This document shows positions 21,899-48,200 of a DNA stretch of 64,000 bases, one piece after another. A model generated the notes under the pieces. It saw only the letters and a program-made list of their open reading frames with translations, was not told the origin of the DNA and did no database searches. Source of the stretch: Macrostomum lignano (lineage: Eukaryota); the NCBI GenBank assembly GCA_002269645.1, contig NIVC01001917.1, positions 62,001 to 126,000 on the forward strand. The letters run 5' to 3'. Numbering within the stretch: the stretch's first letter is position 1; every line of letters starts with the position of its first letter. Both the position numbers and the translations under genes were made by a program.

Positions 21899-23313
21899 CT
21901 AATCCTTATACACCGGCCTATCAGCAGCCAACTGCTCGATCAATCGCCGATATCTCGCCCGCAGCTCACGGACAGCCTCGCTGGCTCGACCGTCGCCGCC
22001 GGCCGACATCAACGGCCAATCGTCCGGGCTGGAGGCGTCGACCAGCTGTTCAGCGTACAGCAGAACGAATGCGCCGCAGTCGGAGCTGTTGGCCTGCCTA
22101 GCGCAGCCGGCCGCCTCTCGGACAGTCGGCAATGCGATTGGACAGTCGCACAGGGCCGGGTGCAGAGCGGCGGCCAGGTCAGCAGCCGAGTGCCGATTGT
22201 TGCCGGACAGGCTGTCGAAATGCAGAGCGTCAACAATTCTACAGGCTCCGTTGGTGGCGTTGCAATTGGCAACGTAGCGGATGGCCAGCAGAGACCAGTG
22301 AGTGCCGCCTGGCTGGTCGGGCGAATCGCTGTCGCTAACCACGCCTAGGAGGCCTCTAGTGTTGGACGAGCCTGCGGCTGTTTTAAATAATAGCGCGTGT
22401 ACTTTACAGTGACTAGGCTGGGTACTCCGAAATTCACAACTTCTCAAACTTCACAACCCCCAAATTCACAACCCCCAAAACTTCACAAACCCGTAAATTC
22501 ACAAAGGCCTTAATTCACAAACCCGTAAATTCACAAAGGCCTTAATTCACAAACCCGTAAATTCACAAAGGCCTTAATTCACAAACCGGTAAATTCACAA
22601 AGGCCTTAATTCACAAACCCGTAAATTCACAAAGGCCTTAATTCACAAACCCGTAAATTCACAAAGGCCTTAATTCACAAACCGGTAAATTCACAAAGGC
22701 CTTAATTCACAAACCCGTAAATTCATAAACCCGTAAATTCACAAAGGCCTTAATTCACAAACCCGTAAATTCATAAACCCGTAAATTCACAAAGGCCTTA
22801 ATTCACAACCCCGTAAATTCATAAAGCCGTAAATTCACAAACCCGTAAATTCACAACCCCCTAAATTTCAAACCTATAAATTCACAAACCTCTAAGTTCA
22901 CAACCCCCAAAATTCACAAACCACAAAATTCACAACCTCCAAAACTCTCCAACCCCTAAAACTCACAATATGTGAAGTGAATTAACTAGATGTCAAGACA
23001 AAAATACAGATGAATCGATACAAAACGATAGCATTGAATTCAGGCTTGTATTAGCAAGCAACTCACAAGCTCTAAGATCTCGCTGAGCCAGCAGTTCAAC
23101 CGCCTGTCCAGTAAGTTTAACAGCCTGGCACACAGTGGGATCTAACAGAGTGATCCGTTGAGTTCCATTACTGGATCCGCGACATTTGGTGCGATCAATA
23201 TATTCTAATGCAAAACTGATGATGTTGTCATTTAGCCACATGCCATCGTGCAATGTGTCATAATCAGATTGGGTGACAAGTGTGTCATAGTAGCTTACTA
23301 GCTGTCTTGGCAT
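21899..23313 (-). CDS. SENP8: SENP8/NEDP1 NEDD8-specific protease (Ulp1/C48 family), 2 exons
   Basis: Exon 1 23313-23067 (MPRQLVSYYDTLVTQSDYDTLHDGMWLNDNIISFALEY..., donor GTGAGT, phase 1). Exon 2 22377-21899. Catalytic motifs GGTHWSLL, HFDS and QANSSDCG are intact. Confidence 0.92.
22440..22965. repeat. 16/32-bp minisatellite (aattcacaaacccgta / aattcacaaaggcctt) in the SENP8 intron
   Basis: Direct reading. Confidence 0.9.
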
Positions 23314-28730: not shown

Positions 28731-29679
28731 ATTTAGGGCGTTTTTTGTATAAAATACTTTAATTAATTTATTGTAGTTTTAATATATTTTTGTTTTTTAG
28801 TAAAATTATTGTAGTTATGCAGCAATTAAGTGCTAATTTAAAAAAATTGTTTTTAGATTTGTTTTAGCTAAGATATTATTAAAACCGCGTTATTTCAATT
28901 TTTGACGCGCTTTTGAATCGACTTCTAGATTAGCGTGCTTTTCAATCATTATCCCTGATAAAGACCTGGTAAAAATTAAACATCATTAAACAACCTATAA
29001 TATAACGCAATCACAGTCGTTTGATCTGTCAGCCTTATAAAAACATGTGAGTTTTCTCTCAAAAAACATCATGAGTTGTATGATGAACTCTAATTTATCT
29101 AAATATACTAAATCTCTCATATTAGTTTGTTTGTATGTCCATGACGCTCTACAGATTGCAATTCTTGACCAATTTTAATTGCGTTTTCGCCAAAATTTAG
29201 ATACTATAGTTGTTGAAATCCGCAGACTTTGAAACTGCTGAATTCGAATCAATGGAGCTATTTTTGCATCTGTCTAACTCTAAAGCATGCGTTGGCAAAC
29301 GCTGGCTTCTGGCTTCTGCCAGCTCTCTCTACGTCCCTCAAGTCCTTTGAAACTTCTCTCCTCTTTGCTCTCTTCTCTCTTCTCTTTCCTCTCTCCTTTC
29401 TTTTCCCATCTTATCTATCATATCATCTCGTCTTCTCTCCTCTCTCTCTTCTCTTTGCTCACTGCTCTCTTTTCTCTTCTCTTTTCTCACTCCTCTACCA
29501 AGGTTTAGTTTACAGCTACAGCTATTTCATATCAGAAATTGGATATGTCGAAAAGGATGTTAAATACATGTAAAAACTGTCATATGCCTCTCACTAAATT
29601 TATTTTCAGAGAAATGACGGGTGAAACTTTATAATATCTACTTCTGGTGACTGATATATTTCTAGATTGTTTCGTAATC

Positions 29680-32600
29680 ATGTCGAGTCCAGTGCATGAG
29701 AAGAGTGAAAGTCTAAACAATAATGACGAGGATTTGAGTGAAAGTTTATTGAATACGGAAGAAGAAGCAATTACTGAAGCGTCAAAGGATAGTGTGCCTA
29801 AGCCAATATTCCAGGGCGATCGGCTTTCAGCGGAAGGCACCATTGTTGGACACCGCAAGAAAGAAGTGTCCTTCTTAGCAACATCGAATGAACCAAAAAT
29901 TAAGGTCGTCGATGGTAAGTATCGGTTGGTATAGTGCAGTGTAGTCAATAAGCATAATTTATTCATTTTATTAGTGTTTTAGGCACTGCAACAATAGAAA
30001 TCTTTTATATCTACGCGCTATCTAACAAATTATACTTAAAAATATTTTCTGCATTTTTTCATAGTTTCGCGTCTCAAATCAGCCTTAAATTGAGTTCAAG
30101 TCCGATGCAGCGGTAGCCTTGCTTTGTGCACAAACCATTTGAATCACACGTACGGACTACACACAGATCAAAACTAAAAACAACTATCGTCAAAATAATA
30201 ACTTCATCATAAAGGTATAACCCCTCATAATCATAAAGGTATAACCCCTCATAATCATAAAGGTATAACCCCTCATAATCATAAAGGTATAACCCCTCAT
30301 AATCATGGATCATCCTGTTCCAATCTAAGGCTTCATTCCCCTAAATATTTGCAGCACTCGACTGTCTCAACTATATACAAGAGGGCACAGAGATGTTCAA
30401 AATTAGGTCGAACGGCCGGCACTACAAGCGCCACTTCTACCTTGACCTGGAGGCCATGGAAATTCGTTGGTGGCCATCGTCTAAGAAGCCGCACAAAGCT
30501 GCAGGTGAACTTGTCAACCGCACGAAGACCCCCCTTCCCCTCATTTAGCGGTTTTGTTGTTTTTCTTTCTAAAAATACCGCTTTTTATTTTCCTGACGGA
30601 GCCAGCAGCAACAGCTATATGGAAAACAGTTTAGCGTGCATGAGGCCGCGTGGCGGTGTCAACAGGATGCTATAAGATATATGGGAATCGATATTGCAGG
30701 GCCAGCCACGCCCCAGCAGCCAACGCCCGGTGCGTCTCCTGTAGGCGCCACCGATCTTGGCCAGTCTGAGTACCTCCTTCCCGCATCATCATGGACAAAC
30801 TCTGCTCGGCTGCGCTGACACACACACACACACCAGACACACACACACCACACTGTAGATACTCGCGGGTGGCGGGTTTGGGTAACTCAGAATACCTATT
30901 CCCCAATCCCCTATTTTGTGTGTGTGTGTGTGTGTGTGTGTTTGTGCATTAGGCATTTCTTGGGACAAGCGTGTATAAACTGACCCGTGCTATTAGGACC
31001 AAAAATGTGTTGGGCCAGGCCCAATATGTGCGTCCCGACACTTCTAAAAATCAAGGCTACTAAATTAAAAAAATATTCGTTCGAACCGTCGTTCGATTCC
31101 CTTTTCAGAAACCAAACAACAGAAACCATATTTCTTACGATACATGAGTAATTTAGCGATTAACAATGTCCCAACAGGTTAGGAAAATCATGCAAAACCA
31201 TTTTTGGTTCAATAGAACAATTGGGACTTTAATCATACTTTCATGTCTCGTCTTTTTATCATGTAATATTCTAAAAGGTCTACTTAAAGTAAAGCTGAAT
31301 GCTTAATAAGGAGCCTGTCTAAAGCTGAAGAGATCAGATATCATTTGGCAGCGTGGTCGTGGCTACATAAGTTTTCCAGGATGTTTTGCTGTAAGAACTG
31401 TTAGTTTATCTCATATACACTCTAATCTATAAAATTCTACATTCTAATTGTAAAATTTTCAACTCTGAAGTATACTAAAATTGGGACAATGTTCAACACT
31501 ACTAACACTTAGTAACTTTATCGCTCCACTACAGGTGTATTGTTTCTATTGTTCCAACGTACTCTTCTCCCTATTTCACCTATCAGCGATTCGCGAGCAT
31601 ATTAATATAGAGCTTAAAATTTTAACAACCACAATTAAAATTCTTGCATTCTTTTTCTTACGGAGAGATTACAGAGCAAAATAAGCCCCTAGGCCTCAAT
31701 CCCTCTCTCACAAAACGTTTTGGCCAGGCTAAACAGCTTGGTAAAGAACTTTGTCCCAGCTTCGATCGATAATCGAGCTAACGCGCGTGTGTACATTCTG
31801 AAGTGTGGGGACACGCACAAATAAAACCCAATCAACCTTCTCTCCAGGCCAATTGAGTGTACATTCAGAAGTGTTAGGACAGCCAAGCCACCCCTATTTA
31901 GAGCCCCCACAAACCTCTTTCAAAGGCCAATCGGAAGAACCAAACTAAATCTAGATTGAGACAATTTTGTACAATACATTGACTTCCCGATACTATTCTA
32001 TTTACTATAAGCCATTCTGAATTTGATCTAGTCAAAATACTCGTAGCTACATACTTAAAACAATGCGGCAGAAGGCCGCTAAGAAGCTGAAGGCCCAAAG
32101 AAAAGTAAGAAAGAGGCCACTAGAGGTTAATGGCCATGCCAACCGAAGAGTGGAAGTGAAATTTGATAAAAGGCATCCCGCCTACGGCCAGACCAACGTT
32201 GTATATCTAAGCGACCTAAAGTTTAAAGGTCAACTATGCCATGGAACACGAGTCGTGATGCAGTGGAAGGGAAAGGAGTGGAGCGGCACGGTGACTAACA
32301 TGTAAGTGACATTAAAAAAACTATATCTTCCTATACTAGTCTTATTGATTTCTAAATAACACAATTACGTGCACACTGTACTTTGCGTAAATTAACACAA
32401 ATATGTAATTTACTGCAGATACATTGATGCAGACCCACTACCGTTTGAAGCCGTTACTAAAGGGCTACCAACTCTAACAGGTATGTATGCCTATGTTAAA
32501 CATTCAATTACTTATCCACGAAGAGTATACTCATAAAGACTATCAATCTTACTTCTTACTTATCAATGCCCGAAAAAATAGCAATGATGTTTAGGTGAAA

Positions 32601-35600
32601 AGAGATCCCTTAAATCAATTTTCAATTTTATAGAGGAACAATTAGCAAATCGAAACGTCTCATATAGTGGCCGTGCGTTTGAAAAATACTACATTGGTAA
32701 GAAAAAACATAATACTCTAAATCTTAAATGTACCTCCGTAAAAGCCTTGAAATTCCCTTGAAAGCGAAAACTAAAACTTTGTAGAGATGGAAGAAAAGCA
32801 ATTTCGCAGCATCTTCAAGCTTAAAAAACATCGATCCAATGCAGGTACTTTGACTGCAGAAACTGTATTTCACATAGAAAAGCACATATTAACTATATTA
32901 TTTACACATCAAACGTAGAAAAGAAAAGCACAAAAAAAACATTTTTAGTGGCAACGGTCGGACAGAAAAACAAACACATTGCACTGGTATATACAAGCAA
33001 AGCTCAAATGTGGAGCAATCATTGGGACAACATTGTGCGGATGTGATGTTTGAGGCATTTATTGGGACGCACTTAATGGGACATGGAGTCTGTTATTTTT
33101 AACGCGGCTCTGGCTGTGACTAGAAAATGGTTCTTGTAGTTGAGCCAGCAAAGCATAGCTCTCTCTAAATAAACAAAACAGAATAGTAGCTTTCTAAGTA
33201 GCTCGAGTTTGAGTTTGGGAATCTGTGAAACTTTGCTCAGCCAATGATTACGTTCATGAAGTGTGTCTACACTACACAACTCCTTTCACACAGCTTCTGA
33301 AGTCGAGAGTTCCGCTGACGCGTCGCGGATTGAGCCCAACTTGAATGCGGTCTCCGCAAGCACAGACGCCACTGGTTCAAGCCTTGTCGCTGAACTAGCT
33401 AGTGCCATTCAGCCTGCTCAACAGCAGCCTCCAGCCGGCTTCAGCCAGACAGTTAGTCAGCTCCCAAGTGGTGCTACAGAAAGTCATTCAAGCGAAAGTG
33501 CAAATGCTAAGAGGAAACGGCGATCTGCTCAAGGTGAGCACTGCATGAGCATTGCTTTGTCTGCATGAAGGTACATGTACTTTAAGCGGGAGTGTTTGGG
33601 AGCCTTGGCAAATAAGGCAATGGATATTTTGGGCGGGCATCGGCAGGACAGAAAAACACATACACTTGGGCACTTATTGGGACAACATTGTGCGGATGTG
33701 ATGTTTGAGGCATTTATTGGGACGCACTTAATGGGACATGGAGTCTGTTATTTTTAACGCGGCTCTGGCTGTGACTAGAAAATGGTTCTTGTAGTTGAGC
33801 CAGCAAAGCATAGCTCTCTCTAAATAAACAAAACAGAATAGTAGCTTTCTAAGTAGCTCGAGTTTGAGTTTGGGAATCTGTGAAACTTTGCTCAGCCAAT
33901 GATTACGTTCATGAAGTGTGTCTACACTACACAACTCCTTTGACACAGCTTCTGAAGTCGAGAGTTCCGCTGACGCGTCGCGGATTGAGCCCAACTTGAA
34001 TGCGGTCTCCGCAAGCACAGACGCCACTGGTTCAAGCCTTGTCGCTGAACTAGCTAGTGCCATTCCGCCTGCTCAACAGCAGCCTCCAGCCGGCTTCAGC
34101 CAGACAGTTAGTCAGCTCCCAAGTGGTGCTACAGAAAGTCATTCAAGCGAAAGTGCAAATGCTAAGAGGAAACGGCGATCTGCTCAAGGTGAGCACTGCA
34201 TGAGCATTGCTTTGTCTGCATGAAGGTACATGTACTTTAAGCGGGAGTGTTTGGGAGCCTTGGCAAATAAGGCAATGGATATTTTGGGCGGGCATCGGCA
34301 GGACAGAAAAACACATACACTTGGGCACTTATTGGGACAACATTGTGCGGATGTGATGTTTGAGGCATTTATTGGGACGCACTTAATGGGACATGGAGTC
34401 TGTTATTTTTAACGCGGCTCTGGCTGTGACTAGAAAATGGTTCTTGTAGTTGAGCCAGCAAAGCATAGCTCTCTCTAAATAAACAAAACAGAATAGTAGC
34501 TTTCTAAGTAGCTCGAGTTTGAGTTTGGGAATCTGTGAAACTTTGCTCAGCCAATGATTACGTTCATGAAGTGTGTCTACACTACACAACTCCTTTGACA
34601 CAGCTTCTGAAGTCGAGAGTTCCGCTGACGCGTCGCGGATTGAGCCCAACTTGAATGCGGTCTCCGCAAGCACAGACGCCACTGGTTCAAGCCTTGTCGC
34701 TGAACTAGCTAGTGCCATTCCGCCTGCTCAACAGCAGCCTCCAGCCGGCTTCAGCCAGACAGTTAGTCAGCTCCCAAGTGGTGCTACAGAAAGTCATTCA
34801 AGCGAAAGTGCAAATGCTAAGAGGAAACGGCGATCTGCTCAAGGTGAGCACTGCATGAGCATTGCTTTGTCTGCATGAAGGTACATGTACTTTAAGCGGG
34901 AGTGTTTGGGAGCCTTGGCAAATAAGGCAATGGATATTTTGGGCGGGCATCGGCAGGACAGAAAAACACATACACTTGGGCACTTATTGGGACAACATTG
35001 TGCGGATGTGATGTTTGAGGCATTTATTGGGACGCACTTAATGGGACATGGAGTCTGTTATTTTTAACGCGGCTCTGGCTGTGACTAGAAAATGGTTCTT
35101 GTAGTTGAGCCAGCAAAGCATAGCTCTCTCTAAATAAACAAAACAGAATAGTAGCTTTCTAAGTAGCTCGAGTTTGAGTTTGGGAATCTGTGAAACTTTG
35201 CTCAGCCAATGATTACGTTCATGAAGTGTGTCTACACTACACAACTCCTTTGACACAGCTTCTGAAGTCGAGAGTTCCGCTGACGCGTCGCGGATTGAGC
35301 CCAACTTGAATGCGGTCTCCGCAAGCACAGACGCCACTGGTTCAAGCCTTGTCGCTGAACTAGCTAGTGCCATTCCGCCTGCTCAACAGCAGCCTCCAGC
35401 CGGCTTCAGCCAGACAGTTAGTCAGCTCCCAAGTGGTGCTACAGAAAGTCATTCAAGCGAAAGTGCAAATGCTAAGAGGAAACGGCGATCTGCTCAAGGT
35501 GAGCACTGCATGAGCATTGCTTTGTCTGCATGAAGGTACATGTACTTTAAGCGGGAGTGTTTGGGAGCCTTGGCAAATAAGGCAATGGATATTTTGGGCG

Positions 35601-38600
35601 GGCATCGGCAGGACAGAAAAACACATACACTTGGGCACTTATTGGGACAACATTGTGCGGATGTGATGTTTGAGGCATTTATTGGGACGCACTTAATGGG
35701 ACATGGAGTCTGTTATTTTTAACGCGGCTCTGGCTGTGACTAGAAAATGGTTCTTGTAGTTGAGCCAGCAAAGCATAGCTCTCTCTAAATAAACAAAACA
35801 GAATAGTAGCTTTCTAAGTAGCTCGAGTTTGAGTTTGGGAATCTGTGAAACTTTGCTCAGCCAATGATTACGTTCATGAAGTGTGTCTACACTACACAAC
35901 TCCTTTGACACAGCTTCTGAAGTCGAGAGTTCCGCTGACGCGTCGCGGATTGAGCCCAACTTGAATGCGGTCTCCGCAAGCACAGACGCCACTGGTTCAA
36001 GCCTTGTCGCTGAACTAGCTAGTGCCATTCCGCCTGCTCAACAGCAGCCTCCAGCCGGCTTCAGCCAGACAGTTAGTCAGCTCCCAAGTGGTGCTACAGA
36101 AAGTCATTCAAGCGAAAGTGCAAATGCTAAGAGGAAACGGCGATCTGCTCAAGGTGAGCACTGCATGAGCATTGCTTTGTCTGCATGAAGGTACATGTAC
36201 TTTAAGCGGGAGTGTTTGGGAGCCTTGGCAAATAAGGCAATGGATATTTTGGGCGGGCATCGGCAGGACAGAAAAACACATACACTTGGGCACTTATTGG
36301 GACAACATTGTGCGGATGTGATGTTTGAGGCATTTATTGGGACGCACTTAATGGGACATGGAGTCTGTTATTTTTAACGCGGCTCTGGCTGTGACTAGAA
36401 AATGGTTCTTGTAGTTGAGCCAGCAAAGCATAGCTCTCTCTAAATAAACAAAACAGAATAGTAGCTTTCTAAGTAGCTCGAGTTTGAGTTTGGGAATCTG
36501 TGAAACTTTGCTCAGCCAATGATTACGTTCATGAAGTGTGTCTACACTACACAACTCCTTTCACACAGCTTCTGAAGTCGAGAGTTCCGCTGACGCGTCG
36601 CGGATTGAGCCCAACTTGAATGCGGTCTCCGCAAGCACAGACGCCACTGGTTCAAGCCTTGTCGCTGAACTAGCTAGTGCCATTCCGCCTGCTCAACAGC
36701 AGCCTCCAGCCGGCTTCAGCCAGACAGTTAGTCAGCTCCCAAGTGGTGCTACAGAAAGTCATTCAAGCGAAAGTGCAAATGCTAAGAGGAAACGGCGATC
36801 TGCTCAAGGTGAGCACTGCATGAGCATTGCTTTGTCTGCATGAAGGTACATGTACTTTAAGCGGGAGTGTTTGGGAGCCTTGGCAAATAAGGCAATGGAT
36901 ATTTTGGGCGGGCATCGGCAGGACAGAAAAACACATACACTTGGGCACTTATTGGGACAACATTGTGCGGATGTGATGTTTGAGGCATTTATTGGGACGC
37001 ACTTAATGGGACATGGAGTCTGTTATTTTTAACGCGGCTCTGGCTGTGACTAGAAAATGGTTCTTGTAGTTGAGCCAGCAAAGCATAGCTCTCTCTAAAT
37101 AAACAAAACAGAATAGTAGCTTTCTAAGTAGCTCGAGTTTGAGTTTGGGAATCTGTGAAACTTTGCTCAGCCAATGATTACGTTCATGAAGTGTGTCTAC
37201 ACTACACAACTCCTTTCACACAGCTTCTGAAGTCGAGAGTTCCGCTGACGCGTCGCGGATTGAGCCCAACTTGAATGCGGTCTCCGCAAGCACAGACGCC
37301 ACTGGTTCAAGCCTTGTCGCTGAACTAGCTAGTGCCATTCCGCCTGCTCAACAGCAGCCTCCAGCCGGCTTCAGCCAGACAGTTAGTCAGCTCCCAAGTG
37401 GTGCTACAGAAAGTCATTCAAGCGAAAGTGCAAATGCTAAGAGGAAACGGCGATCTGCTCAAGGTGAGCACTGCATGAGCATTGCTTTGTCTGCATGAAG
37501 GTACATGTACTTTAAGCGGGAGTGTTTGGGAGCCTTGGCAAATAAGGCAATGGATATTTTGGGCGGGCATCGGCAGGACAGAAAAACACATACACTTGGG
37601 CACTTATTGGGACAACATTGTGCGGATGTGATGTTTGAGGCATTTATTGGGACGCACTTAATGGGACATGGAGTCTGTTATTTTTAACGCGGCTCTGGCT
37701 GTGACTAGAAAATGGTTCTTGTAGTTGAGCCAGCAAAGCATAGCTCTCTCTAAATAAACAAAACAGAATAGTAGCTTTCTAAGTAGCTCGAGTTTGAGTT
37801 TGGGAATCTGTGAAACTTTGCTCAGCCAATGATTACGTTCATGAAGTGTGTCTACACTACACAACTCCTTTCACACAGCTTCTGAAGTCGAGAGTTCCGC
37901 TGACGCGTCGCGATTGAGCCCAACTTGAATGCGGTCTCCGCAAGCACAGACGCCACTGGTTCAAGCCTTGTCGCTGAACTAGCTAGTGCCATTCCGCCTG
38001 CTCAACAGCAGCCTCCAGCCGGCTTCAGCCAGACAGTTAGTCAGCTCCCAAGTGGTGCTACAGAAAGTCATTCAAGCGAAAGTGCAAATGCTAAGAGGAA
38101 ACGGCGATCTGCTCAAGGTGAGCACTGCATGAGCATTGCTTTGTCTGCATGAAGGTACATGTACTTTAAGCGGGAGTGTTTGGGAGCCTTGGCAAATAAG
38201 GCAATGGATATTTTGGGCGGGCATCGGCAGGACAGAAAAACACATACACTTGGGCACTTATTGGGACAACATTGTGCGGATGTGATGTTTGAGGCATTTA
38301 TTGGGACGCACTTAATGGGACATGGAGTCTGTTATTTTTAACGCGGCTCTGGCTGTGACTAGAAAATGGTTCTTGTAGTTGAGCCAGCAAAGCATAGCTC
38401 TCTCTAAATAAACAAAACAGAATAGTAGCTTTCTAAGTAGCTCGAGTTTGAGTTTGGGAATCTGTGAAACTTTGCTCAGCCAATGATTACGTTCATGAAG
38501 TGTGTCTACACTACACAACTCCTTTCACACAGCTTCTGAAGTCGAGAGTTCCGCTGACGCGTCGCGGATTGAGCCCAACTTGAATGCGGTCTCCGCAAGC

Positions 38601-41600
38601 ACAGACGCCACTGGTTCAAGCCTTGTCGCTGAACTAGCTAGTGCCATTCCGCCTGCTCAACAGCAGCCTCCAGCCGGCTTCAGCCAGACAGTTAGTCAGC
38701 TCCCAAGTGGTGCTACAGAAAGTCATTCAAGCGAAAGTGCAAATGCTAAGAGGAAACGGCGATCTGCTCAAGGTGAGCACTGCATGAGCATTGCTTTGTC
38801 TGCATGAAGGTACATGTACTTTAAGCGGGAGTGTTTGGGAGCCTTGGCAAATAAGGCAATGGATATTTTGGGCGGGCATCGGCAGGACAGAAAAACACAT
38901 ACACTTGGGCACTTATTGGGACAACATTGTGCGGATGTGATGTTTGAGGCATTTATTGGGACGCACTTAATGGGACATGGAGTCTGTTATTTTTAACGCG
39001 GCTCTGGCTGTGACTAGAAAATGGTTCTTGTAGTTGAGCCAGCAAAGCATAGCTCTCTCTAAATAAACAAAACAGAATAGTAGCTTTCTAAGTAGCTCGA
39101 GTTTGAGTTTGGGAATCTGTGAAACTTTGCTCAGCCAATGATTACGTTCATGAAGTGTGTCTACACTACACAACTCCTTTGACACAGCTTCTGAAGTCGA
39201 GAGTTCCGCTGACGCGTCGCGGATTGAGCCCAACTTGAATGCGGTCTCCGCAAGCACAGACGCCACTGGTTCAAGCCTTGTCGCTGAACTAGCTAGTGCC
39301 ATTCAGCCTGCTCAACAGCAGCCTCCAGCCGGCTTCAGCCAGACAGTTAATCAGCCCCAAGGTTGTCGCGAAATCGATCAGTTCCTTTGTGCACCTGTGG
39401 CGTATTGTTCTGAAGATGCAAACTTTGCGATTTTAAAACCGGTCTCGAATCCGAAGTCGTGCTGTGAGCCACATTTTGGGGCTCTGGCTTTTGCTGCTGA
39501 TGATAGTGATCCATATCATCTGGAAAGCAATACTGGAACCGATTGTTCAGCTGGAGCTGTAGTGGGTTGCTCAAATTACGAGAATTTGGCCGCCGACAAT
39601 TCGAATTTTTATCCTCAGATGAATGCCTTGTCTGTGGTTCAAGATTTTTCTGCGCATTCGATGCCGTCCCAACTCGTTGATTTTGTAACTGCGAAAGCTG
39701 AAGATGGTGATCAAGTGACCTTTTCGGCTAATGTCAATGTTAGTTCCGCGCGGATTGAAGAAGAAAGTGTCTCAGTTACTCTACCTGTTTCCTTGAAGCC
39801 TGAGGATGACGCAGGATGCAGTGTTGTTTTGCAGAAGCTTGTCAGTTCGACGACAAAGCTTCATTACTGCAAATATTGTGGCAAAATGTTGACGAAAATC
39901 TCTCGGCACTACAAAACCGCTCATAAAGCAGAGTCTGACGTTAAGCGCTTGCAGCAGATCCGCCGTAAGTCCATTCGTAGAAAGGCATTTAAGGCCCTTG
40001 AAAGCGAAGGCGATTATATTCACAATAAAATGGTTTTGGCAAAACGAGAAGGTGAATTAATAATTGCAAGGAGACAAAAGGACGATGAAAATTCTCCTGG
40101 GAGTTTTCTTCCCTGTCATCGATGCTTTCAATTCATAAAGAAGGATCTTCTCTACCGCCACAGAAATGCATGCTCCGGTAGCCTATCTGAAATTATTAAG
40201 GAAGACGAGAATGACTCCGATGAAGACACTGAGAACTCTTCGCCCTCCGAGTCAGAGAGTGCAGAAGCGCGCCTAAAAAATCCTACGAACAATCACTACG
40301 TGCAGCTGTCTCGAATTCTGCTAAAAAATCCAGAGCCTGCTTCAAAACTTCTGGAACCAGATTCGGAACTCTTTAAGACAGTTCTCTCAAGACTCATTTG
40401 TGATGATCTGTTTGATACAATCTGCAAAGATGAGCTCTTACTTCGTTTAGGTGATCGTTATTTGTCTAAGCAAAAAAAGGTGAACCGGCAGCACGTGTCT
40501 AGTAAAATCAGGGATGCAGCTCGTGTTTTTATTCAGCTACAGCAGTTGCATGGTGATTATAGCTTAAGACACTTTCTGCAACCACAGTATTTTGATGATT
40601 GGATCGAAGTTATCCGAAAGTTATCGAATGAGGCCCCAACATTCGCACTACGCATGGGTCATTCAATACCGCATCTGTGCAATATCCTAATCGGTGAAGC
40701 GATTAGGACTTCTAATGATGGCCTTAAAAAGTCCGCATCTGACTTTCTTGAGCTGAAAAATACTGAGTACCACCATCTCGTTACTGCGAAGAGCCTCAAG
40801 ACAATAAGTGAAAGAGCAGCACTTGTGCAGGACTGTGTACCGCTGACGGACGACATAGTAAAACTTTCCACTTTTATGAAGTCGGCGATTGTCGATAAAA
40901 TCGAAGAGCTCAAGACAGGAACATTGGATTCAAATGTTCCTTTGTTGTACCGTGAACTAGTCTACCTAATCATGACAAAACTAACTTTTTTCAACCGGCG
41001 CCGATCCAGTGAGATTTCTCAAATGGTAATGGCGATGTTAGATGCAGCTTCGGCATCTCACACGCAGGATGACCTGCATCAGTATTTGACGCCACTCGAG
41101 AAGGAACTCGCCAGCAGGTTAAAGGTCATAAATATATCAGGCAAAAGAGGACGATCTGTGCCTATCGTTATCGATCGAATTTGTTGGGATGGACTGATGT
41201 GCCTAAAAGACTGTCGCGAGGCTGCCGGTGTAAGCCGAAAGAACGTATTTGTGTTTGCGATTCCTGGCTATGAACAATCCGTCTACAGATGTCCTGTGGC
41301 AATCGACAAAGTAGTGAAAATGAGCTCACTCCAACTGCAACGAGCGGATCTCCTTCGCTCAAGATTTTTAAGGAAGCATTGTGCGACTGTTTCGCAACTT
41401 CTTGACTTAAAAGACAATGAGCTAGATTGGCTAGCTCGCCATCTCGGCCATGATATTACTGTCCACAGACAGTTCTACAGATTACATCAAAATACTCTCG
41501 AGCTAGCAAAGGTTTCGAAGATTTTGGAGTTGATGGAGAGTGGGAACCTGAAGAAATTTAAAGGAAAGGGTCTGGAAGAAATAACATTAGAAGATTTATC

Positions 41601-44600
41601 AGAGCCGCCGTTGGATGACCATGATGAGACAGCAGAGTTATCGGCGGTGCCGGACACTTCGGCCACAACAGCTGCTTCGACTTCGGCCACAACAGCTGCT
41701 TCGACTTCGGCCACAACAGTTGTTTCGACTTCGCCAACTTTCGCTTTGGGAACTGGTTCAGCCGCTACAACTAAAACAAGCGCAAAGAGACGCACAAAAT
41801 CTGGTGAGTCAGTATATAGCTTAATTTGATTCATGCAGATACAAATATTTTTTACTGCTCAAATAGATTGTTTATAAGAGGTTAGATATATTTTTCTGAT
41901 CGCATTTTATCATATGTTAACGGTATATAATCGCATAGTGTCTAGCGAATCGTATGCGATTAACTCAGTCAAAGTACATGCATTTACTGGAGTTGAAGAA
42001 AAAAGAAATCGCGTGAACATCGCATAGATACTCGTATAAGTTCATTTTGCCTGGGGCTTTTACTGTCCAAAAAAAACTTATGCAAATGCAAACATTTCTA
42101 AGCAGAGTGCACAATGCACATCTTAAAATTTCCAAATCATTTGGCCCTTTTAATTGTATGCTAAGTTAATTATAAGAATTAAAACTTTTTGTGGACATGT
42201 TTTGCATACTTTCTGTGAACGTAAGCAGCAACCTCTTAGTCTATAAAATATGTGCTACCATTACAGCAAAGAAGCTGACCGACAGCCAAAAAAGCGACTT
42301 GCGCAAGGCATTTGCCAGCTTTCTAGCCAGCGGGGATCTTCCTGGCAAGCAAGTCATTTTAGAGCTTCGACCCGAATCTGTTGCTGCTGTTGACTGGCGC
42401 CAAATTAAAGACAATTTGCGCGTTGCGCTTTCAAAAAAGAAATAGCTAGTCGAAATTTCTATTTTAAGAAAAGCAAATATTTAACTTTAGCTAATTTTAG
42501 CTAATTGGCTTACTTTAGCTCACAGATTCTAGAACAGCTAGATGAGCCACTGAAGCACAGCTATATACAACAGCTGAAATAAATGACTTTGATAACTTTA
42601 GAAGCCCAAGCTTGCAGGCGTAAACAACTTGCTGATTGGTCCAGCCATAATGTACATTAGCCACTGAAATGTACATGGCAGATTTACCCTGGAACTACCG
42701 AGAAAGGCAATAAAAATTGGGTGGCGGGGCGGGGGTAGAGGTTCTGTGTGGAATTTGAGGGTTTAAGCTTGGGGGGTAAAAGCCAATAAATAAACCTTGC
42801 CTTAGTTTGTCTTCAAAACTTCATTAAAATGCCTCGGTTAACTTAAACTACTAAACTGAAAGTACCTTGCAGGCAAATGTGCTGAGTGAATCATCTAGTT
42901 TGTTCTAGTATCTGTGGTTTAATTACTAATTAAAGCTTAATGGAAGACAGGCAAAATTTGTAAAAATCCTTGGATCAAAAACTTTTTGCGGCTGAAATAA
43001 CTAGTTACTAGATACTAGTTGCATAGCTCGAAGCTACTATTAGGTCGTTGATTCCGCGTGTCGAGCACAATTCTCTAATTTGTTTTTTTTAATAGCCACC
43101 TGGCTTAAAAACTGTGTTGTCATTCATTCAAAAATTTTATCACCACCTGCTCTAAACATTGTGTTTCTACTTATTCAACGATTTTATTCGCCATCTGCTC
43201 TAAACATTGTGTTTCTACTTATTCAACGATTTTATTCGCCATCTGCTCTAAACATTGTGTTTCTACTTATTCAACCATTTTATTCGCCACCTGCTCTAAA
43301 CATTGTGTTTCTACTTATTCAACCATTTTATTCGCCACCTGCTCTAAACATTGTGTTTCTACTTATTCAACCATTTTATTCGCCACCTGCTCTAAACATT
43401 GTGTTTCTACTTATTCAACCATTTTATTCGCCACCTGCTCTAAACATTGTGTTTCTACTTATTCAACCATTTTATTCGCCACCTGCTCTAAACATTGTGT
43501 TTCTACTTATTCAACCATTTTATTCGCCACCTGCTCTAAACATTGTGTTTCTACTTATTCAACCATTTTATTCGCCACCTGCTCTAAACATTGTGTTTCT
43601 ACTTATTCAACCATTTTATTCGCCACCTGCTCTAAACATTGTGTTTCTACTTATTCAACCATTTTATTCGCCACCTGCTCTAAACATTGTGTTTCTACTT
43701 ATTCAACCATTTTATTCGCCACCTGCTCTAAACATTGTGTTTCTACTTATTCAACCATTTTATTCGCCACCTGCTCTAAACATTGTGTTTCTATTATTCA
43801 ACCATTTTATTCGCCACCTGCTCTAAACATTGTGTTTCTACTTATTCAACCATTTTATTCGCCACCTGCTCTAAACATTGTGTTTCTATTTATTCAACCA
43901 TTTTATTCGCCACCTGCTCTAAACATTGTTTTTATTTATTCAAAACTTTTTTATTACAAACATTCAAACATAAGTTGCAACTTTTTAAAAAAAATAAATT
44001 TGTTTCCCTTCAGTTTTGTTCCGTTTTCCAAAAGCCTCTTTATTTGTGGTGCCTCTTTATTTTACTTTATGAATTAAACATTCGCATATAAAATGATGGA
44101 AGCGTTCAGAAATTCTTCTATCTGGTTGATACATCCACTGGTTATTTATAGGCCTAGATATACTTCTATGGTAAAATTGTTAGGGCAGCCCTTCCACACT
44201 AGCTATGGTGGGATTGTTGGGACAGCCCTATGCACACTGGCTATGGTGGGATTGTTGGGACAGCCCTATGCACACTGGCTATGGTGGGATTGTTGGGACA
44301 GCCCTATGCACACTGGCTATGGTGGGATTGTTGGGACAGCCCTATGCACACTGGCTATGGTGGGATTGTTGGGACAGCTCTATCCACACTAGCTTTGGTG
44401 GAATTGTTGGGACAGCCCTATGCACACTGGCTATGGTGGAATTGTTGGGACAGCCCTATGTACACTGGCTATGCTGGAATTGTTGGGACAGCCCTATGTA
44501 CACTGGCTATGGTGGAATTGTTGGGACAGCCCTATGTACACTGGCTATGCTGGAATTGTTGGGACAGCCCTATGTACACTGGCTATGCTGGAATTGTTGG

Positions 44601-45231
44601 GACAGCCCTATACTATAGTGTGTGCTGGCTTCTGCTTCTGCTATAGTGTGGTTCATTTCCGCATCCTTTTACGTAGCATTCTGTGGGTCCGAATAGCTGA
44701 CATGTACCTTTTGAGTAATTCTAGTGATTGTGTCATAATCAATAAAGTACATTTTTATGAACAGTGGAGTTTCGCTACAGAATTGTTTTTTCCCAGTGGC
44801 ACTAAATGTAGCAAATTTTGTTTATTCAGATCGTAAAATTTTTTTGATATGTGTCAATGTCGTTTGTTTTCGATAACCTTAAAGTCCCTTGCCATTTACC
44901 ATCCTGTCTTCTATAATCTATGATCGCTGAAATTATCTGGTGAAATTTGACGCGCTGATATTATTGCCTTAAGTGGAATTCAGCAAGACACCAGGGTTTT
45001 TTAATTCTGTTTTAGACAAGTATACATGTACAATCTGTTGTGAGTTCAATGCACCTCGAAAAATGCTTTCCAACTGTTTTCAGTAAGCCAAAAGCATGTT
45101 GTCAATAAAAATCGATTTGGTGGGTTGAAAATTGCCTGTGTGGGGACGTGTGTGTGTGTGATTTTTCGTGTGTCGAAGCAGTCCCAATATGTGCAAGCTT
45201 TTGCACACTTGGCCAATAAGTGCCTCGTGCA

Positions 45232-45278
<47 letters not shown>

Positions 45279-48200
45279 AGGAAACCCCGCCCAAAAAGAC
45301 GATAAGAAACCCGAGCAGCCCGGAGGACTGATTCGGCTCCCTCTTTTTGATGCTTACAGTTGAATAGTCAGTATAATATTTTCCTCAACCTGATGGGGGC
45401 AGCCGTTCGATACGGGAGGGTCGAGACAGCCTGGCAAAAAGCAAATAATTTTCTCTGGAGCGACCATTAGTAGGCTAGCGAATAGTCCTCTGAGTTAATC
45501 TTCTTAGTCGAAACTTTTGCCTTAACCTGTCACTCACTGACTTTGTTATAAATATTCTCCCTTCAGGTGAAAGTTAATTAATCCTTGGGGCTCAGGTAAG
45601 CCGGATTTCGGCTAAAAGAATTACCTCTAGCTTGTTAAGCTGTCTTTAGGGCTGGCTGGGTGGATTTTTTGGGCTTAAATTGATCCTCTTTCATCCCAAT
45701 GTCAACTACTCGGACAGAGGATCTGAGAAAGCGAGTGGCTAAGCTATATGAGCTGTCGATCAGAAAAAAGATTCCCGAGTGTTTGAGCTGCATTTGACTT
45801 CTTTATACTCTTCCTATTTTTATTTCGTCTTTCAATTCTGTACCTTTATGGAATCTTCCAGACCAATATTAATGAAGCTTTAATTTCTATTGAGTTGTCA
45901 TCTATCTCTTGGCAGTCTCCATTTGTACTTTGCTTAAAACCAAAATCGATCAATTCTTTAGGTCTGCGACTTTTGACTGACACAATTCGACTGCCGACCC
46001 TAACCTAAACCCTAACCCACCTAAACCCTAACCCACCTAAACCCTAACCTAAACCCTAACCCACCTAAACCCTAACCCACCTAAACCCTAACCCACCTAA
46101 ACCCTAACCTAAACCCTAACCCACCTAAACCCTAACCCACCTAAACCCTAACCCACCTAAACCCTAACCTAAACCCTAACCCATCTAAACCCTAACCCAC
46201 CTAAACCCTAACCCACCTAAACCCTAACCCACCTAAACCCTAACCCACCTAAACCCTAACCCACCTAAACCCTAACCCACCTAAACCCTAACCCACCTAA
46301 ACCCTAACCCACCTAAACCCTAACTTAAACCCTAACCCACCTAAACCCTAACCCACCTAAACCCTAACCCACCTAAACCCTAACCCACCTAAACCCTAAC
46401 CCACCTAAACCCTAACCTAAACCCTAACCCACCTAAACCCTAACCCACCTAAACCCTAACCCACCTAAACCCTAACCTAAACCCTAACCCACCTAAACCC
46501 TAACCCACCTAAACCCTAATCCACCTAAACCCTAACCCACCTAAACCCTAACCCACCTAAACCCTAACCCACCTAAACCCTAACCCACCTAAACCCTAAC
46601 CCACCTAAACCCTAACCCACCTAAACCCTAACCCACCTAAACCCTAACCCACCTAAACCCTAACCCACCTAAACCCTAACCCACATAAACCCTAACCTTA
46701 AATCGTCGGCAGTCCGCAACTGGCAATCAAAAGTCACTGCCAGTCAAAAGACACTGCCAGTCAAAAGACATTGCCAGTCAAAAGACACCGGGAGTCAAAA
46801 GACACTGCCAGTCAAAAGATACTGCCAGTCAAAAGACACTGCCAGTCAAAAGACACTGCCAGTCAAAAGACACTGCCAGTCAAAAGACACTGCCAGTCAA
46901 AAGACACTGCCAGTAAAAAGACACTGGGAGTCAAAAGTCTAAAACCCTAACTTTTGAAAGGCTACTTTTTTACCAAATACATTTTAGATTCAAATAACCT
47001 GAGGAATTCCAGAATTGAGAAGAATTTGATAACCAGTGCGAAGAAGGTTTAAAAAGTTGGCATCACGCTCAAGTGCATTTCCAATTCCCATAGAGCTGAA
47101 GGTTTTCGCATCGCTGGGGTCACGCGATAATCAAAGTTTAAGCTCGTTAGTCCCAGACCCCTTCTGTCCACCCCCAACCCCACCCTCACTAAATCACTCA
47201 GTGTCAGTCGCCGATCTCAAAGAAGTCCGCCGTGGTCGGACTACGGCGGCACTTCGCGGGAGCAGCGTCGCCGCCACGCAGTCGCCTGACTGCGCCTTCA
47301 CCATCGTGATTGAGACTTCGGGCAGAATCGGCGGCGGCACGTCGAAACCCAAGCAGCGCTGCATCGACCTGGTGACGGCATTGGTGGACGCTGCCAGCGT
47401 GTGGGTCACCGGCCTGGGCTGCCTCATCAATGGCCAGAAAGGTGCGATCTGATCGGGAAGGGCGTCAGAGGCGTTGGTTGGAGGGAGTAATCTGAGGGGT
47501 GATAACTTGAGTATTCTAAGGGATGATAACTTGAGTATACTAGGGGTGATAACTTGAGTATTTTAAGGGGTGATAACTTGAGTAATCTGAGGGGTGATAA
47601 CTTGAGTAATCTGAGGGGTTATAACTTGAGTAATCTGAGGGGTGATAACTTGATTAATCTGAGGGGTGATAACTTAAATGTGCTTAGAGTGCTCTGTGCA
47701 CAATCAATGATTACCTATCTTTAATATTGCACCCAGATGCTACTGGCGAAGCGGGACACGACAGGCCGCAGCTCATGCGGGACCGGTAAGAGCTCTTCAA
47801 CTTTCTACAATGTTTCAAGGGGTCTTCCAGATTCCGCTGACTTTTGATGTAGCTGTAGACATCATAGGAGTCAGTTGAGGCAGTTGTACCTCCCTACTAT
47901 CGCCAGATACTACGGTGTAACTTTCATAGAAATCTAGAAATCAGGGGGTCAGTTGACCTTCTTTGTTTTCTTTATTGCTAAAATAGACTTTTACATGTAT
48001 TCATAATGGTTCAATTGACCTCTCTTTAGTATTCTCAGATACCAATGCAGACATTTGATACATGCATAATAGGATAGTACAAAATACAGACCCTTCCACA
48101 GTATCCAGAGGTCAATTGACCCCCAATTTATCACCCCAGCCTTTAAGGCAGACTTTTATAGAAGTCAGGGGTCGGTTGACCCCCCCGTAGTATCCTCAGA

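What the first reader, a model, noticed from the sequence alone, without database searches (positions are those of the whole stretch)
30917..45276. Microsatellite-targeted tyrosine-recombinase transposon with an att-like junction
Seen: (GT)n on both sides in direct orientation, GTTTGTG at both junctions, and ~35-bp imperfect inverted ends. Joining the ends gives ccaataagtgcctcgtgcac-GTTT-gtgcattaggcatttcttgg, a loxP-like dyad (TGCAC-GTTT-GTGCA) expected of a circular excision intermediate. The empty site would be (GT)nTT(TG)n. Established: YR elements such as Cryptons recombine via short direct overlaps without a classical TSD. I recall some Crypton groups preferring microsatellites but cannot confirm the group. 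The Arg, Lys, His and Tyr motif residues look intact, so the element may be active.
Basis: partly seen in the sequence, partly recalled or inferred. Interest (0 to 1): 0.88.

Follow-up and report, generated by a model that had tools for sequence, protein, structure and literature searches.

The report
Microsatellite-targeting tyrosine-recombinase transposon in a flatworm
This is a 14.3-kb jumping gene of the flatworm Macrostomum lignano that encodes a tyrosine recombinase and inserts, always in the same orientation, into (GT)n microsatellites; it looks very recently active, but microsatellite-specific elements of this general kind (CryptonV) are already on record.

Summary
The window is Macrostomum lignano DNA. 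The element spans about 30940-45239. It has 36-bp imperfect inverted ends, a 7-bp direct repeat GTTTGTG at both junctions, and (GT)n on both sides.

Five further copies were fetched from the same genome. They lie at four other sites, and every junction seen (3 left, 6 right) is identical and embedded in (GT)n in the same orientation. The 2,673-nt main ORF is 100% identical in all six copies.

The ORF product folds as a tyrosine recombinase: XerH is the best structural match, and the residues R616, K663, R739, H765 and Y774 are conserved. The HxxR histidine is a threonine. Two zinc fingers precede the recombinase domains.

The protein belongs to a very large, unannotated animal family (5,396 cluster representatives). 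By profile comparison this family lies outside Crypton A/I/F/S and DIRS. Relatives on metagenome contigs also end at "...ACGT[A/T](TG)n".

The most likely mechanism is excision to a circle whose joined ends form a dyad core site, followed by conservative recombination with a GTTT-containing (GT)n site. Neither the empty site nor the circle could be retrieved.

Microsatellite-specific YR transposons (CryptonV, Repbase 2012) are already on record, so I rate this a new member of a known kind, of moderate interest.

The parts
30918..30939 (+). Left flanking (GT)11 microsatellite (target DNA)
   Evidence: In the other copies the left tract is 11-21 units long.
30940..30946 (+). Left copy of the 7-bp direct repeat GTTTGTG. 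GTTT is the proposed crossover core. The following GTG overlaps the first 3 bases of the inverted end.
   Evidence: It is identical in 3 of 3 loci that reach the left end.
30944..30979 (+). Left terminal inverted repeat (GTGCATTAGGCATTTCTTGGGACAAGCGTGTATAAA)
   Evidence: It matches the reverse complement of the right end at 26 of 36 positions, and 2 of 20,000 random pairs reach that score. A homologous left end sits next to (TG)7 in metagenome locus L080.
31021..31031 (+). Subterminal copy of the terminal motif CCAATATGTGC
33011..39361 (+). Tandem array of about 10 units of 655 bp. Each unit carries a 237-nt phase 1-1 N-terminal exon cassette of the YR gene. Each also carries, on the minus strand (the orientation of the left end), three copies of the terminal motif GTCCCAATAAGTGCC or variants of it.
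   Evidence: Repeated ORFs, self-BLAST, and the motif at 40 hits against 3.6 expected. P0001 shows the cassettes spliced. The unit number varies among copies: 9, 10, 10, at least 11, at least 13 and at least 17.
39157..41803 (+). Main exon of the tyrosine-recombinase gene. It is the ORF 39157-41829 up to the splice donor after 41803. The true start codon lies upstream and is unresolved.
   Evidence: identical to the main body of NCBI protein BOX15_Mlig014457g5, apart from its spliced C-terminus. The donor tctg|gtgagt is shown. The 2,673-nt ORF is 100% identical in all six copies.
39868..40173 (+). Two zinc-finger motifs: C238, C241, H251, H256 and C320, C323, H335, C339
   Evidence: These columns are invariant or nearly invariant in a 40-sequence alignment. 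There are weak profile matches to Zn-finger PDB chains.
40354..41592 (+). Core-binding plus catalytic YR domains (about aa 400-812). Active-site residues are R616, E619, K663, T736 (in place of His II), R739, H765 and Y774.
   Evidence: This is the region conserved in 5,396 relatives. The AF2 model has mean pLDDT 83.5. Foldseek gives XerH-difH at probability 1.0 over about 400 columns. hhalign places these residues on the R, HxxR, LGH and Y of XerD.
41804..42266 (+). Intron of the YR gene
   Evidence: gt...ag boundaries are read. Splicing reproduces the P0001 C-terminus ...KRRTKS|AKKLTDSQ.
42267..42445 (+). Last exon, encoding [16 protein letters not shown]...LSKKK*. It resembles the C-terminal tail of relative P0004.
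   Evidence: It has no Pfam hit.
43087..43943 (+). 48-bp tandem array (17.9 units)
44166..44611 (+). 38-bp tandem array (11.8 units) containing GCCCTATGCAC, which resembles the right-end core GCCTCGTGCAC in the same orientation
45184..45194 (+). Subterminal copy of the terminal motif (CCAATATGTGC), 18 bp upstream of the terminal copy
45197..45232 (+). Right terminal inverted repeat, ending ...CCAATAAGTGCCTCGTGCAC
   Evidence: It is identical in 6 of 6 loci.
45233..45239 (+). Right copy of the direct repeat GTTTGTG
45240..45277 (+). Right flanking (TG)19 microsatellite (target DNA)
   Evidence: The right tract is 4-19 units long in the copies.

Best explanation
This is an autonomous DNA transposon of Macrostomum lignano, about 14.3 kb long. 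Its only recognisable gene encodes a divergent tyrosine recombinase, built of two zinc fingers, a core-binding domain and a catalytic domain with R-K-(T)-R-H-Y.

Shown here:
- The element is multi-copy, and the 2,673-nt main ORF is identical in all six copies.
- Its ends are fixed to the base.
- Every insertion lies inside a (GT)n microsatellite, in one orientation, with GTTTGTG at both junctions.

Inferred mechanism:
- The recombinase binds the inverted ends (arm core TGCCTnnTGCAC).
- It recombines the two junctions (attL x attR) within the shared GTTT(GTG) core. This releases a circle whose joined ends form the dyad CCTCGTGCAC-GTTT-GTGCATTAGG (attP-like) and leaves (GT)n-GTTTGTG-(TG)m behind.
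- The circle then re-integrates by the reverse conservative reaction at another (GT)n tract that carries the same GTTT interruption.
- The asymmetric core explains the fixed orientation.
- The roughly 30 internal and 2 subterminal copies of the terminal motif are probably accessory binding sites or autoregulatory sites for the same protein.

The element is an orientation- and site-specific Crypton-type (sensu lato) transposon. It is most probably of the microsatellite-specific CryptonV kind.
For: **Multi-copy element with fixed ends**
- Six loci carry the same annotated protein.
- The flanks differ at five sites, yet all 3 left and 6 right junctions are identical and lie in (GT)n.
- The copies are 99.7-99.9% identical overall and 100% identical over the 2,673-nt ORF.

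**YR identity**
- The AF2 model has pLDDT 83.5.
- Foldseek's top hits are XerH-difH complexes at probability 1.0, followed by type IB topoisomerases, and viral integrases.
- 3 of 40 relatives hit Pfam Phage_integrase, at best 5e-6.
- R616, E619, K663, R739, H765 and Y774 are invariant and align to the XerD catalytic motifs.

**No other transposition gene**
- No RT, DDE or other domain was found in the remaining ORFs, and no Rfam family matched.

**Core-site geometry**
- The inverted ends match at 26 of 36 positions, p about 1e-4, and the direct repeat abuts them.

**Accessory motif**
- The terminal motif gives 40 hits against 3.6 expected, oriented like the nearer end.

**Family-wide support from 80 metagenome loci encoding relatives**
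- (TG) tracts of at least 4 units number 69 on the gene strand against 27 on the other strand.
- Ten tracts, in 8 independent element groups, are preceded by GT[A/T]. All ten lie downstream of the YR gene; none is on the opposite strand.
- Three of these read ...ACGTA(TG)n, like M. lignano's ...CACGTT(TG)n.
- Three copies of one relative (L033, L035, L040) diverge from each other exactly at a (TG)n tract.
- L080 has host collagen-like DNA, then (TG)7, then a left end homologous to the M. lignano inverted end.

**Precedents**
- Cryptons recombine at short direct repeats, and active CryptonF-1_cRei inserts and excises at CAYCG.
- CryptonV inserts in microsatellites.
- Nimaviral Zn-finger YRs insert in (TAACC)n.
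Against: - No empty site, circle junction or excision footprint was seen, so the crossover position and the requirement for a GTTT interruption in the target are inferred.
- The four unoccupied (GT)n tracts in the M. lignano DNA to hand have no GTTTGTG. The sample is too small to mean much.
- In one relative the interruption next to the right end is present in two copies (TGTATGTG) and absent in a third (TGTGTGTG). This could mean that pure tracts are also used.
- A 4-bp spacer between perfectly symmetric arms is shorter than the usual 6-8 bp, so the real cleavage positions are uncertain.
- The HxxR histidine is replaced by Thr, and catalysis is untested.
- The 5' end and start codon of the gene are unresolved.
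- Identity among copies could partly reflect assembly redundancy or gene conversion. L004 and L005 share a flank.
Confidence: 0.8

Rival explanations
1. Same element and same enzyme, but a different attachment site. The excised circle carries a short (GT)k tract between two fixed GTTT motifs: ...GTGCAC-GTTT-(GT)k-GTTT-GTGCAT.... It recombines anywhere within a perfect host (GT)n by repeat homology. On this reading both GTTT motifs belong to the element and the empty site is a pure (GT)n.
For: - GTTTGTG is invariant at all 9 junctions. That is automatic if both copies are element-borne.
- Episomal nimaviruses with related-architecture YRs carry a (TAACC)n tract joining their two ends.
- Pure (GT)n tracts are the only unoccupied type seen in the DNA to hand.
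- Flanking tract lengths vary freely, from 4 to 21 units.
Against: - It separates the two symmetric arms by at least 12 bp, which is unlike any characterised YR core site.
- It ignores the near-perfect dyad created by direct joining of the ends.
- The GTTT motifs would lie in direct, not inverted, orientation relative to the arms.
Confidence: 0.15
2. A cut-and-paste (DDE-type) transposon defined by its inverted ends and a 7-bp target-site duplication. It would be mobilised in trans by a transposase encoded elsewhere, with the YR gene as cargo or a domesticated host gene.
For: - Inverted ends plus a 7-bp flanking direct repeat is the classical DDE signature.
- Ginger2-type DDE elements do target (AT)n.
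Against: - A true TSD copied from (GT)n would be GTGTGTG, not GTTTGTG, and would vary between sites. Here it is identical at 9 junctions.
- The repeat overlaps the left inverted end by 3 bases.
- Insertion is strictly orientation-specific, which DDE insertion into a symmetric staggered cut would not be.
- No DDE ORF was found.
- Distant relatives of the YR in other animals carry the same right-end/(TG)n signature, so the specificity travels with the YR.
Confidence: 0.03
3. Not a currently mobile element. On this reading it is a recently amplified segmental duplication or assembly redundancy of a host locus that happens to be flanked by microsatellites, or an integrated episome or virus.
For: - The M. 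lignano assembly is known to be redundant, and L004 and L005 share a flank.
- The ORF identity of 100% is unusually high.
Against: - Five different flanks have breakpoints exact to the base at both ends.
- No viral genes were found, and no relatives occur in IMG/VR.
- The family behaves as multi-copy in many animals.
Confidence: 0.02

Closest known systems
CryptonV (Repbase; Kapitonov & Jurka 2012, Repbase Reports 12:2034, as cited in PMC8869645)
   Same: It is a YR-encoding DNA transposon lineage, some families of which insert specifically in microsatellites. It is kept as a group separate from Crypton A/F/I/S. That fits my finding that this YR is not related to those four groups at profile level.
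   Different: CryptonV was described from cnidarians, and this element is from a flatworm. I had no CryptonV sequence or description of its termini. Sequence membership, the identity of the target repeat, and the presence of inverted ends or a GTWT core therefore could not be compared.
Classical Cryptons (CryptonF/S/A/I; Goodwin 2003, Kojima & Jurka 2011; active CryptonF-1_cRei in Chlamydomonas)
   Same: - A single YR gene and no RT.
- Short (4-7 bp) direct repeats at both termini, interpreted as the crossover sequence.
- The proposed circle intermediate.
- No true TSD.
   Different: - Those elements generally lack inverted ends, and their targets are short unique motifs (TATGG, CAYCG), not microsatellites.
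- hhalign of the catalytic domain gives P of 0.014-0.056 to CryptonA, I and F/S. Most pairs among CryptonA, CryptonI, CryptonF/S, DIRS and prokaryotic YRs match at 1e-6 to 5e-12; two pairs (CryptonI with F/S, and F/S with prokaryotes) give only about 5e-4.
- There was no DUF3504 hit in 40 members.
Telomere-repeat-specific tyrosine recombinases of endogenous nimaviruses (Kawato et al. 2023, PMC10871703)
   Same: - The YR has a C2H2 zinc-binding domain plus an N-terminal SAM-like/core-binding domain.
- Integration is specific for a host simple repeat, (TAACC)n.
- Those authors also report it as unrelated to DIRS, Enterprise and Cryptons.
   Different: - Those YRs sit in 200-580-kb viral genomes, whereas here the YR is the only gene of a 14-kb element.
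- The repeats differ.
- No sequence comparison was possible, and nothing related was found in IMG/VR.
Xer/dif, Cre/loxP and lambda Int/att site-specific recombination
   Same: - The best structural match is XerH bound to difH.
- The joined ends give two inverted arms around a short asymmetric spacer, as in dif, loxP and the attP core.
- An asymmetric core gives directional integration.
   Different: - The sequence relationship is marginal (hhalign P 0.001).
- Extra zinc fingers are present.
- Thr replaces His II.
- The target arms are a microsatellite rather than a cognate inverted pair.

Membership tests
Tyrosine recombinase superfamily | Two-domain fold (core-binding plus catalytic) of Xer/Cre/Int type | tested here: met
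   The AF2 model has pLDDT 83.5. Foldseek gives XerH-difH (5jk0/5jjv) at probability 1.0 over about 400 aligned columns, followed by topoisomerase IB. Viral integrases also match.
Tyrosine recombinase superfamily | Catalytic residues Arg I, Lys (beta-hairpin), His II, Arg II, His/Trp III and the Tyr nucleophile | tested here: inconclusive
   R616, K663, R739, H765 and Y774 are invariant in 40 sequences and align to the XerD motifs. His II is a nearly invariant Thr (T736). Five of six residues are present, and activity is untested.
Tyrosine recombinase superfamily | Match to Pfam Phage_integrase (PF00589) | tested here: inconclusive
   The query has no hit. 3 of 40 family members hit, at best 5.4e-6.
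Crypton DNA transposons (operational definition) | Encodes a YR but no reverse transcriptase | tested here: met
   The only recognisable ORF product is the YR. No RT or other TE domain was found in the remaining ORFs.
Crypton DNA transposons (operational definition) | [quoted passage not shown] | tested here: met
   GTTTGTG occurs at both ends and is identical at 9 junctions.
Crypton DNA transposons (operational definition) | Absence of terminal inverted repeats | tested here: not met
   The ends are 36-bp imperfect inverted repeats, 26 of 36 matching, p about 1e-4. A few Cryptons listed by Kojima & Jurka do have TIRs.
Crypton groups A, I, F, S (sequence clades) | YR catalytic domain clusters with the group at profile level; CryptonA relatives match DUF3504 | tested here: not met
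   hhalign gives P of 0.014 (A), 0.056 (I) and 0.053 (F/S). Most pairs of the known groups match at 1e-6 to 5e-12, and the weakest two pairs at about 5e-4. The HMM scores about 0 bits against all of them. No DUF3504 hit was found. The reference sequences came from an OCR-read supplement.
CryptonV | Target-site specificity for microsatellites | tested here: met
   Five independent insertions all lie in (GT)n. Relatives end at (TG)n. The defining statement is taken from PMC8869645.
CryptonV | Sequence relationship of the YR to Repbase CryptonV consensus proteins | not testable with these tools
DIRS/Ngaro/VIPER YR retrotransposons | RT and RNase H genes; split direct repeats or inverted LTR-like ends | tested here: not met
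   No RT or RNase H was found. hhalign to DIRS YRs gives P of 0.5.
Nimavirus telomere-specific YRs | Zn-finger plus SAM-like plus YR architecture, with simple-repeat-specific integration | tested here: met
   The architecture comes, and the specificity.
Nimavirus telomere-specific YRs | Sequence relationship; residence in a nimaviral genome | not tested
   No nimaviral YR sequence was available. The element carries no viral genes, and IMG/VR held no relatives.

The most novel reading that the evidence does not exclude
The element may be the first apparently active representative of a large, so far undescribed metazoan superfamily of tyrosine-recombinase transposons. The family has thousands of members, from priapulids, molluscs, echinoderms, nemerteans and insects to cyprinid fish, and no Pfam model. 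On this reading it is distinct not only from Crypton A/I/F/S and DIRS but also from CryptonV. Its members would share a conserved ...ACGTWT core that directs orientation-specific integration into (TG)n microsatellites. That would amount to a natural, sequence-specific 'safe-harbour' integrase for animal genomes, sitting in a transgenesis-ready model flatworm.
Probability: 0.25. Interest if true: 0.75.

Novelty: new member of a known kind. Interest (0 to 1): 0.5.

Why it matters
Eukaryotic YR DNA transposons are the least understood class of transposons. Activity has been seen directly only for a Chlamydomonas Crypton, and no att site has been dissected.

This element offers a clean test case:
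- six copies with identical coding sequence
- exact ends
- a predicted attP-like dyad and a predicted attB, (GT)n-GTTTGTG-(TG)m
- a host, M. lignano, that can be cultured and made transgenic

The work also shows that the recombinase belongs to a very large animal protein family with no domain annotation. One family member is even deposited as a bacterial MAG protein. That matters for genome annotation and for interpreting 'uncharacterized' genes.

A recombinase that integrates directionally into an abundant, mostly neutral repeat is also of practical interest as a genome-engineering tool.

Tried and rejected
**Empty site**
I tried three routes to fetch the homeologous or allelic locus, and all failed.
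- A search with the downstream PH-domain exon found no protein.
- A nearby single-exon ORF is not on record.

**Profile search of the word-indexed protein database**
It returned only two hits. The Tegillarca locus it led to (L007) has the YR split by introns and a (TC)113 tract, and it was uninformative for ends. The P0004 contig is too short.

**Viral origin**
No relatives were found in IMG/VR.

**Family-wide left-junction signature, (GT)n followed by W-Y-G**
It is not enriched: 3 upstream, 4 downstream and 3 on the other strand. Only L080 and possibly L013 are usable.

**Family-wide conservation of the GTCCCAAYAA motif**
It is not enriched: 4 hits against 2.2 expected. It is shared only by M. 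lignano and L080.

**GCCTNNTGCAC as a repeated core motif**
It is not significant in the window: 21 hits against 13 expected.

**L018 as a complete element flanked by (GT)n on both sides**
This is ambiguous. The better right end is ...GACGTA(TG)6 at 5821, and the contig has a 33-bp inverted duplication at its start.

**Similarity break-points between metagenome copies**
Most fall in repeated N-terminal coding sequence or at contig ends and do not define termini.

**Literature**
No open paper links Cryptons with GT/CA repeats. Kojima & Jurka 2011 does not mention microsatellites.

Full report
**Observation**

The window is Macrostomum lignano DNA. The 890-codon ORF at 39157-41829 is identical to the main body of NCBI protein BOX15_Mlig014457g5.

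All the described features are present:
- Left: (GT)11 at 30918-30939, GTTTGTG at 30940-30946, and an inverted end starting at 30944.
- Right: an inverted end finishing at 45232, GTTTGTG at 45233-45239, and (TG)19 at 45240-45277.

The ends match at 26 of 36 positions with one gap, and 2 of 20,000 random 36-mer pairs reach that score. Each terminal 20-mer is unique in the window even with 3 mismatches allowed.

**Is it a mobile element with these exact ends?**

The annotated protein is encoded on six contigs of assembly GCA_002269645.1. One of them (L001) is the window's own locus. The other five have unrelated flanks, except that L004 and L005 share theirs.

In every locus the element stops at the same base:
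- 3 of 3 left junctions read (GT)n-GTTTGTG-CATTAGGC.
- 6 of 6 right junctions read CCTCGTGCAC-GTTTGTG-(TG)n.

Flanking tracts range from 4 to 21 units. That makes five independent insertions, all in (GT)n and all with the element's gene strand on the GT strand.

The copies are 99.7-99.9% identical overall and 100% identical across the 2,673-nt main ORF. They differ mainly in the number of internal tandem units.

**The protein**

Pfam and PDB sequence searches of the ORF found nothing. An exhaustive phmmer search found 5,396 cluster representatives at E of 1e-3 or better, and 734 at 1e-30 or better, sharing residues of about 400-812.

Named members come from Priapulus, Holothuria, Lytechinus, Argopecten, Tegillarca, Lineus, Zophobas, a seadragon and cyprinid fish. 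All are 'uncharacterized' or 'hypothetical', apart from two names that look unreliable ('mitogen-activated protein kinase 15-like' on one carp cluster member, and a UniRef 'Myb-like domain-containing' name on the Tegillarca protein). One is filed as a bacterial MAG protein.

A 40-sequence alignment shows two zinc fingers (C238/C241/H251/H256 and C320/C323/H335/C339). It also shows invariant R616, E619, K663, R739, H765, H770 and Y774.

An AlphaFold model of residues 225-835 has mean pLDDT 83.5. It matches XerH-difH complexes best (probability 1.0, about 400 columns), then type IB topoisomerases, and viral integrases in BFVD.

hhalign places the conserved residues on Arg I, HxxR, LGH and the Tyr of XerD. 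A nearly invariant Thr (T736) stands in place of His II. Three of the 40 members reach Pfam Phage_integrase, and none reaches DUF3504. The protein is therefore a tyrosine recombinase with one non-canonical active-site position.

**Gene structure**

P0001 and the sequence show three things:
- A 237-nt phase 1-1 exon cassette is present in each 655-bp unit.
- The last cassette runs into the main exon.
- A 463-bp intron (41804-42266) precedes a final exon (42267-42445).

The start codon is not resolved. No other ORF of the element has a recognisable domain, and no Rfam family matches.

**Internal architecture**

The right-terminal 11-mer CCAATAAGTGC, allowing one mismatch, occurs 40 times in the window against 3.6 expected.
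- There are three copies per 655-bp unit, all on the minus strand, which is the orientation of the left end.
- Single subterminal copies lie at 31021 and 45184.

The 38-bp array near the right end carries a variant of the right-end core. I read these as accessory or autoregulatory binding sites. That reading is inference. The motif is not conserved across the family.

**Relation to known YR elements**

I used the catalytic-domain alignments in the supplement of Kojima & Jurka 2011.
- An HMM of this family scores about 0 bits on every Crypton, DIRS and prokaryotic sequence.
- hhalign gives P of 0.014 for CryptonA, 0.056 for CryptonI, 0.053 for CryptonF/S, 0.5 for DIRS and 0.001 for prokaryotic YRs.
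- Most pairs of those reference groups match at 1e-6 to 5e-12. Two pairs (CryptonI with F/S, and F/S with prokaryotic YRs) give only about 5e-4.

The family is thus a separate, more divergent lineage.

Operationally the element is Crypton-like, with a YR, no RT and short terminal direct repeats. It does have inverted ends, which classical Cryptons lack.

The literature search turned up the key precedent. [quoted passage not shown] I could not obtain CryptonV sequences, so membership is likely but untested.

A second parallel is the nimaviral YRs. These have C2H2 and SAM-like domains, integrate into (TAACC)n, and are reported as unrelated to Cryptons and DIRS.

**Is the microsatellite specificity a family trait?**

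A scan of JGI metagenome contigs found 418 contigs encoding relatives, and 80 were kept. Oriented by the YR gene:
- (TG) tracts of at least 4 units number 69 on the gene strand against 27 on the opposite strand.
- There are 52 tracts downstream against 23 upstream, in similar amounts of sequence.
- Ten tracts, in 8 independent element groups, are immediately preceded by GT[A/T]. All ten are downstream of the gene; none is on the other strand.
- Three of these read ...ACGTA(TG)n (L018, L058, L086), against M. lignano's ...CACGTT(TG)n.
- Three copies of one relative (L033, L035, L040) are 96-99% identical up to ...GGGAGAGT and then enter a (TG)n tract, beyond which all three differ.
- L080 shows host collagen-like sequence, then (TG)7, then TACGC-GCATTGCCGCATTTGTTGGGAC. 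That is clearly homologous to the M. lignano left end GTGCATTAGGCATTTCTTGGGAC.

A comparable left-junction signature was not statistically supported.

**Mechanism**

Joining the ends gives TGCCTcgTGCAC-GTTT-GTGCAttAGGCA. This is two inverted arms around an asymmetric spacer, the geometry of dif, loxP or an attP core.

In conservative YR recombination the overlap is heteroduplex in both products. If the target were pure (GT)n, each daughter chromatid would keep the element's GTTT at only one junction. Finding GTTT at all 9 junctions argues one of two things:
- The target already contains GTTTGTG, a single G-to-T interruption of (GT)n.
- Both GTTT motifs are fixed parts of the element, and crossing-over occurs in a (GT)k tract carried by the circle. 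This is the rival, with a nimavirus precedent.

The one relative lacking the interruption in one of three copies leaves room for the second, or for mismatch tolerance.

A DDE cut-and-paste reading is unlikely for four reasons:
- The 'TSD' is invariant and is not the microsatellite sequence.
- It overlaps the inverted end.
- Insertion is directional.
- The specificity travels with the YR across phyla.

**Context**

PH, PI-PLC-X, PI-PLC-Y and C2 exons of a PLC-like gene lie downstream on the same strand. An upstream ORF (29647-29934) carries an 'HRKKEVSF' motif that I recall from PRIP/PLCL N-termini. An intronic location is therefore plausible, but I did not verify the intron number.

**Verdict**

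This is a very recently active, orientation- and (GT)n-specific tyrosine-recombinase transposon.

The concept of microsatellite-specific YR transposons exists already (CryptonV). I therefore rate it a new member of a known kind, with moderate interest (0.5). That interest rests on the well-defined att-like sites, the identical copies in a tractable model animal, and the size of the unannotated protein family.

The empty site, the circle junction and the CryptonV comparison are the decisive missing pieces.

Noticed in passing
window 2861-3565 (-): A 234-aa ORF has a signal-peptide-like N-terminus followed by about 20 tandem QMFRYGKR units. It looks like an RYamide-type neuropeptide precursor with dibasic cleavage sites and a Gly amidation donor. 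It has no Pfam hit.
   Followed up: partly
window 46003-46500: An interstitial telomere-like array (ACCTAAACCCTAACCC, a TTAGGG-type repeat with variants; 33 units of 16 bp) lies about 700 bp downstream of the element.
   Followed up: no
window 47036-58590 (+), and 29647-29934 (+): Exons of a PLC-like gene lie here: PH_12, PI-PLC-X, PI-PLC-Y and C2. An upstream ORF has a PRIP/PLCL-like 'RKKxVSF' motif, which I recognise from memory. The element probably sits in an intron of this gene.
   Followed up: partly
window 21899-23313 (-): A two-exon SENP8/NEDP1-like cysteine protease gene. Its single intron is almost entirely a 21-23-bp minisatellite. The window as a whole is unusually rich in coding-frame-open minisatellites (for example 7280-8530, 10194-11183, 12159-12907, 13360-15300 and 50208-51056).
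   Followed up: no
window 33011-39361; loci L001-L006: The 655-bp unit holds a complete in-phase (1-1) exon cassette encoding about 79 aa with a KRKRR motif. Transcripts can therefore carry a variable number of N-terminal modules. The unit number differs between copies that are otherwise identical: 9, 10, 10, at least 11, at least 13 and at least 17. Several metagenome relatives also have tandem repeats in the N-terminal coding region.
   Followed up: partly
protein P0015: A member of this animal YR family is deposited as 'MAG: hypothetical protein [Sphingomonadales bacterium]' (MBM3937987.1). This is probably eukaryotic contamination of a metagenome-assembled genome.
   Followed up: no
L058 7801-8180: The 380 bp immediately inside the right end of this relative form a 79%-identical palindrome, just before ...GCACGTA(TG)25.
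   Followed up: no
L007 64787-65013: The Tegillarca granosa relative has its YR coding sequence split over several exons, with a (TC)113 tract between them, inside a 62-kb gene model named 'Myb-like domain-containing'. It may be a decayed or domesticated copy.
   Followed up: no
window 30818-30853: An (AC)n tract, in the opposite orientation, lies 65 bp upstream of the occupied (GT)n and is not used by the element. This fits strand-specific targeting.
   Followed up: no
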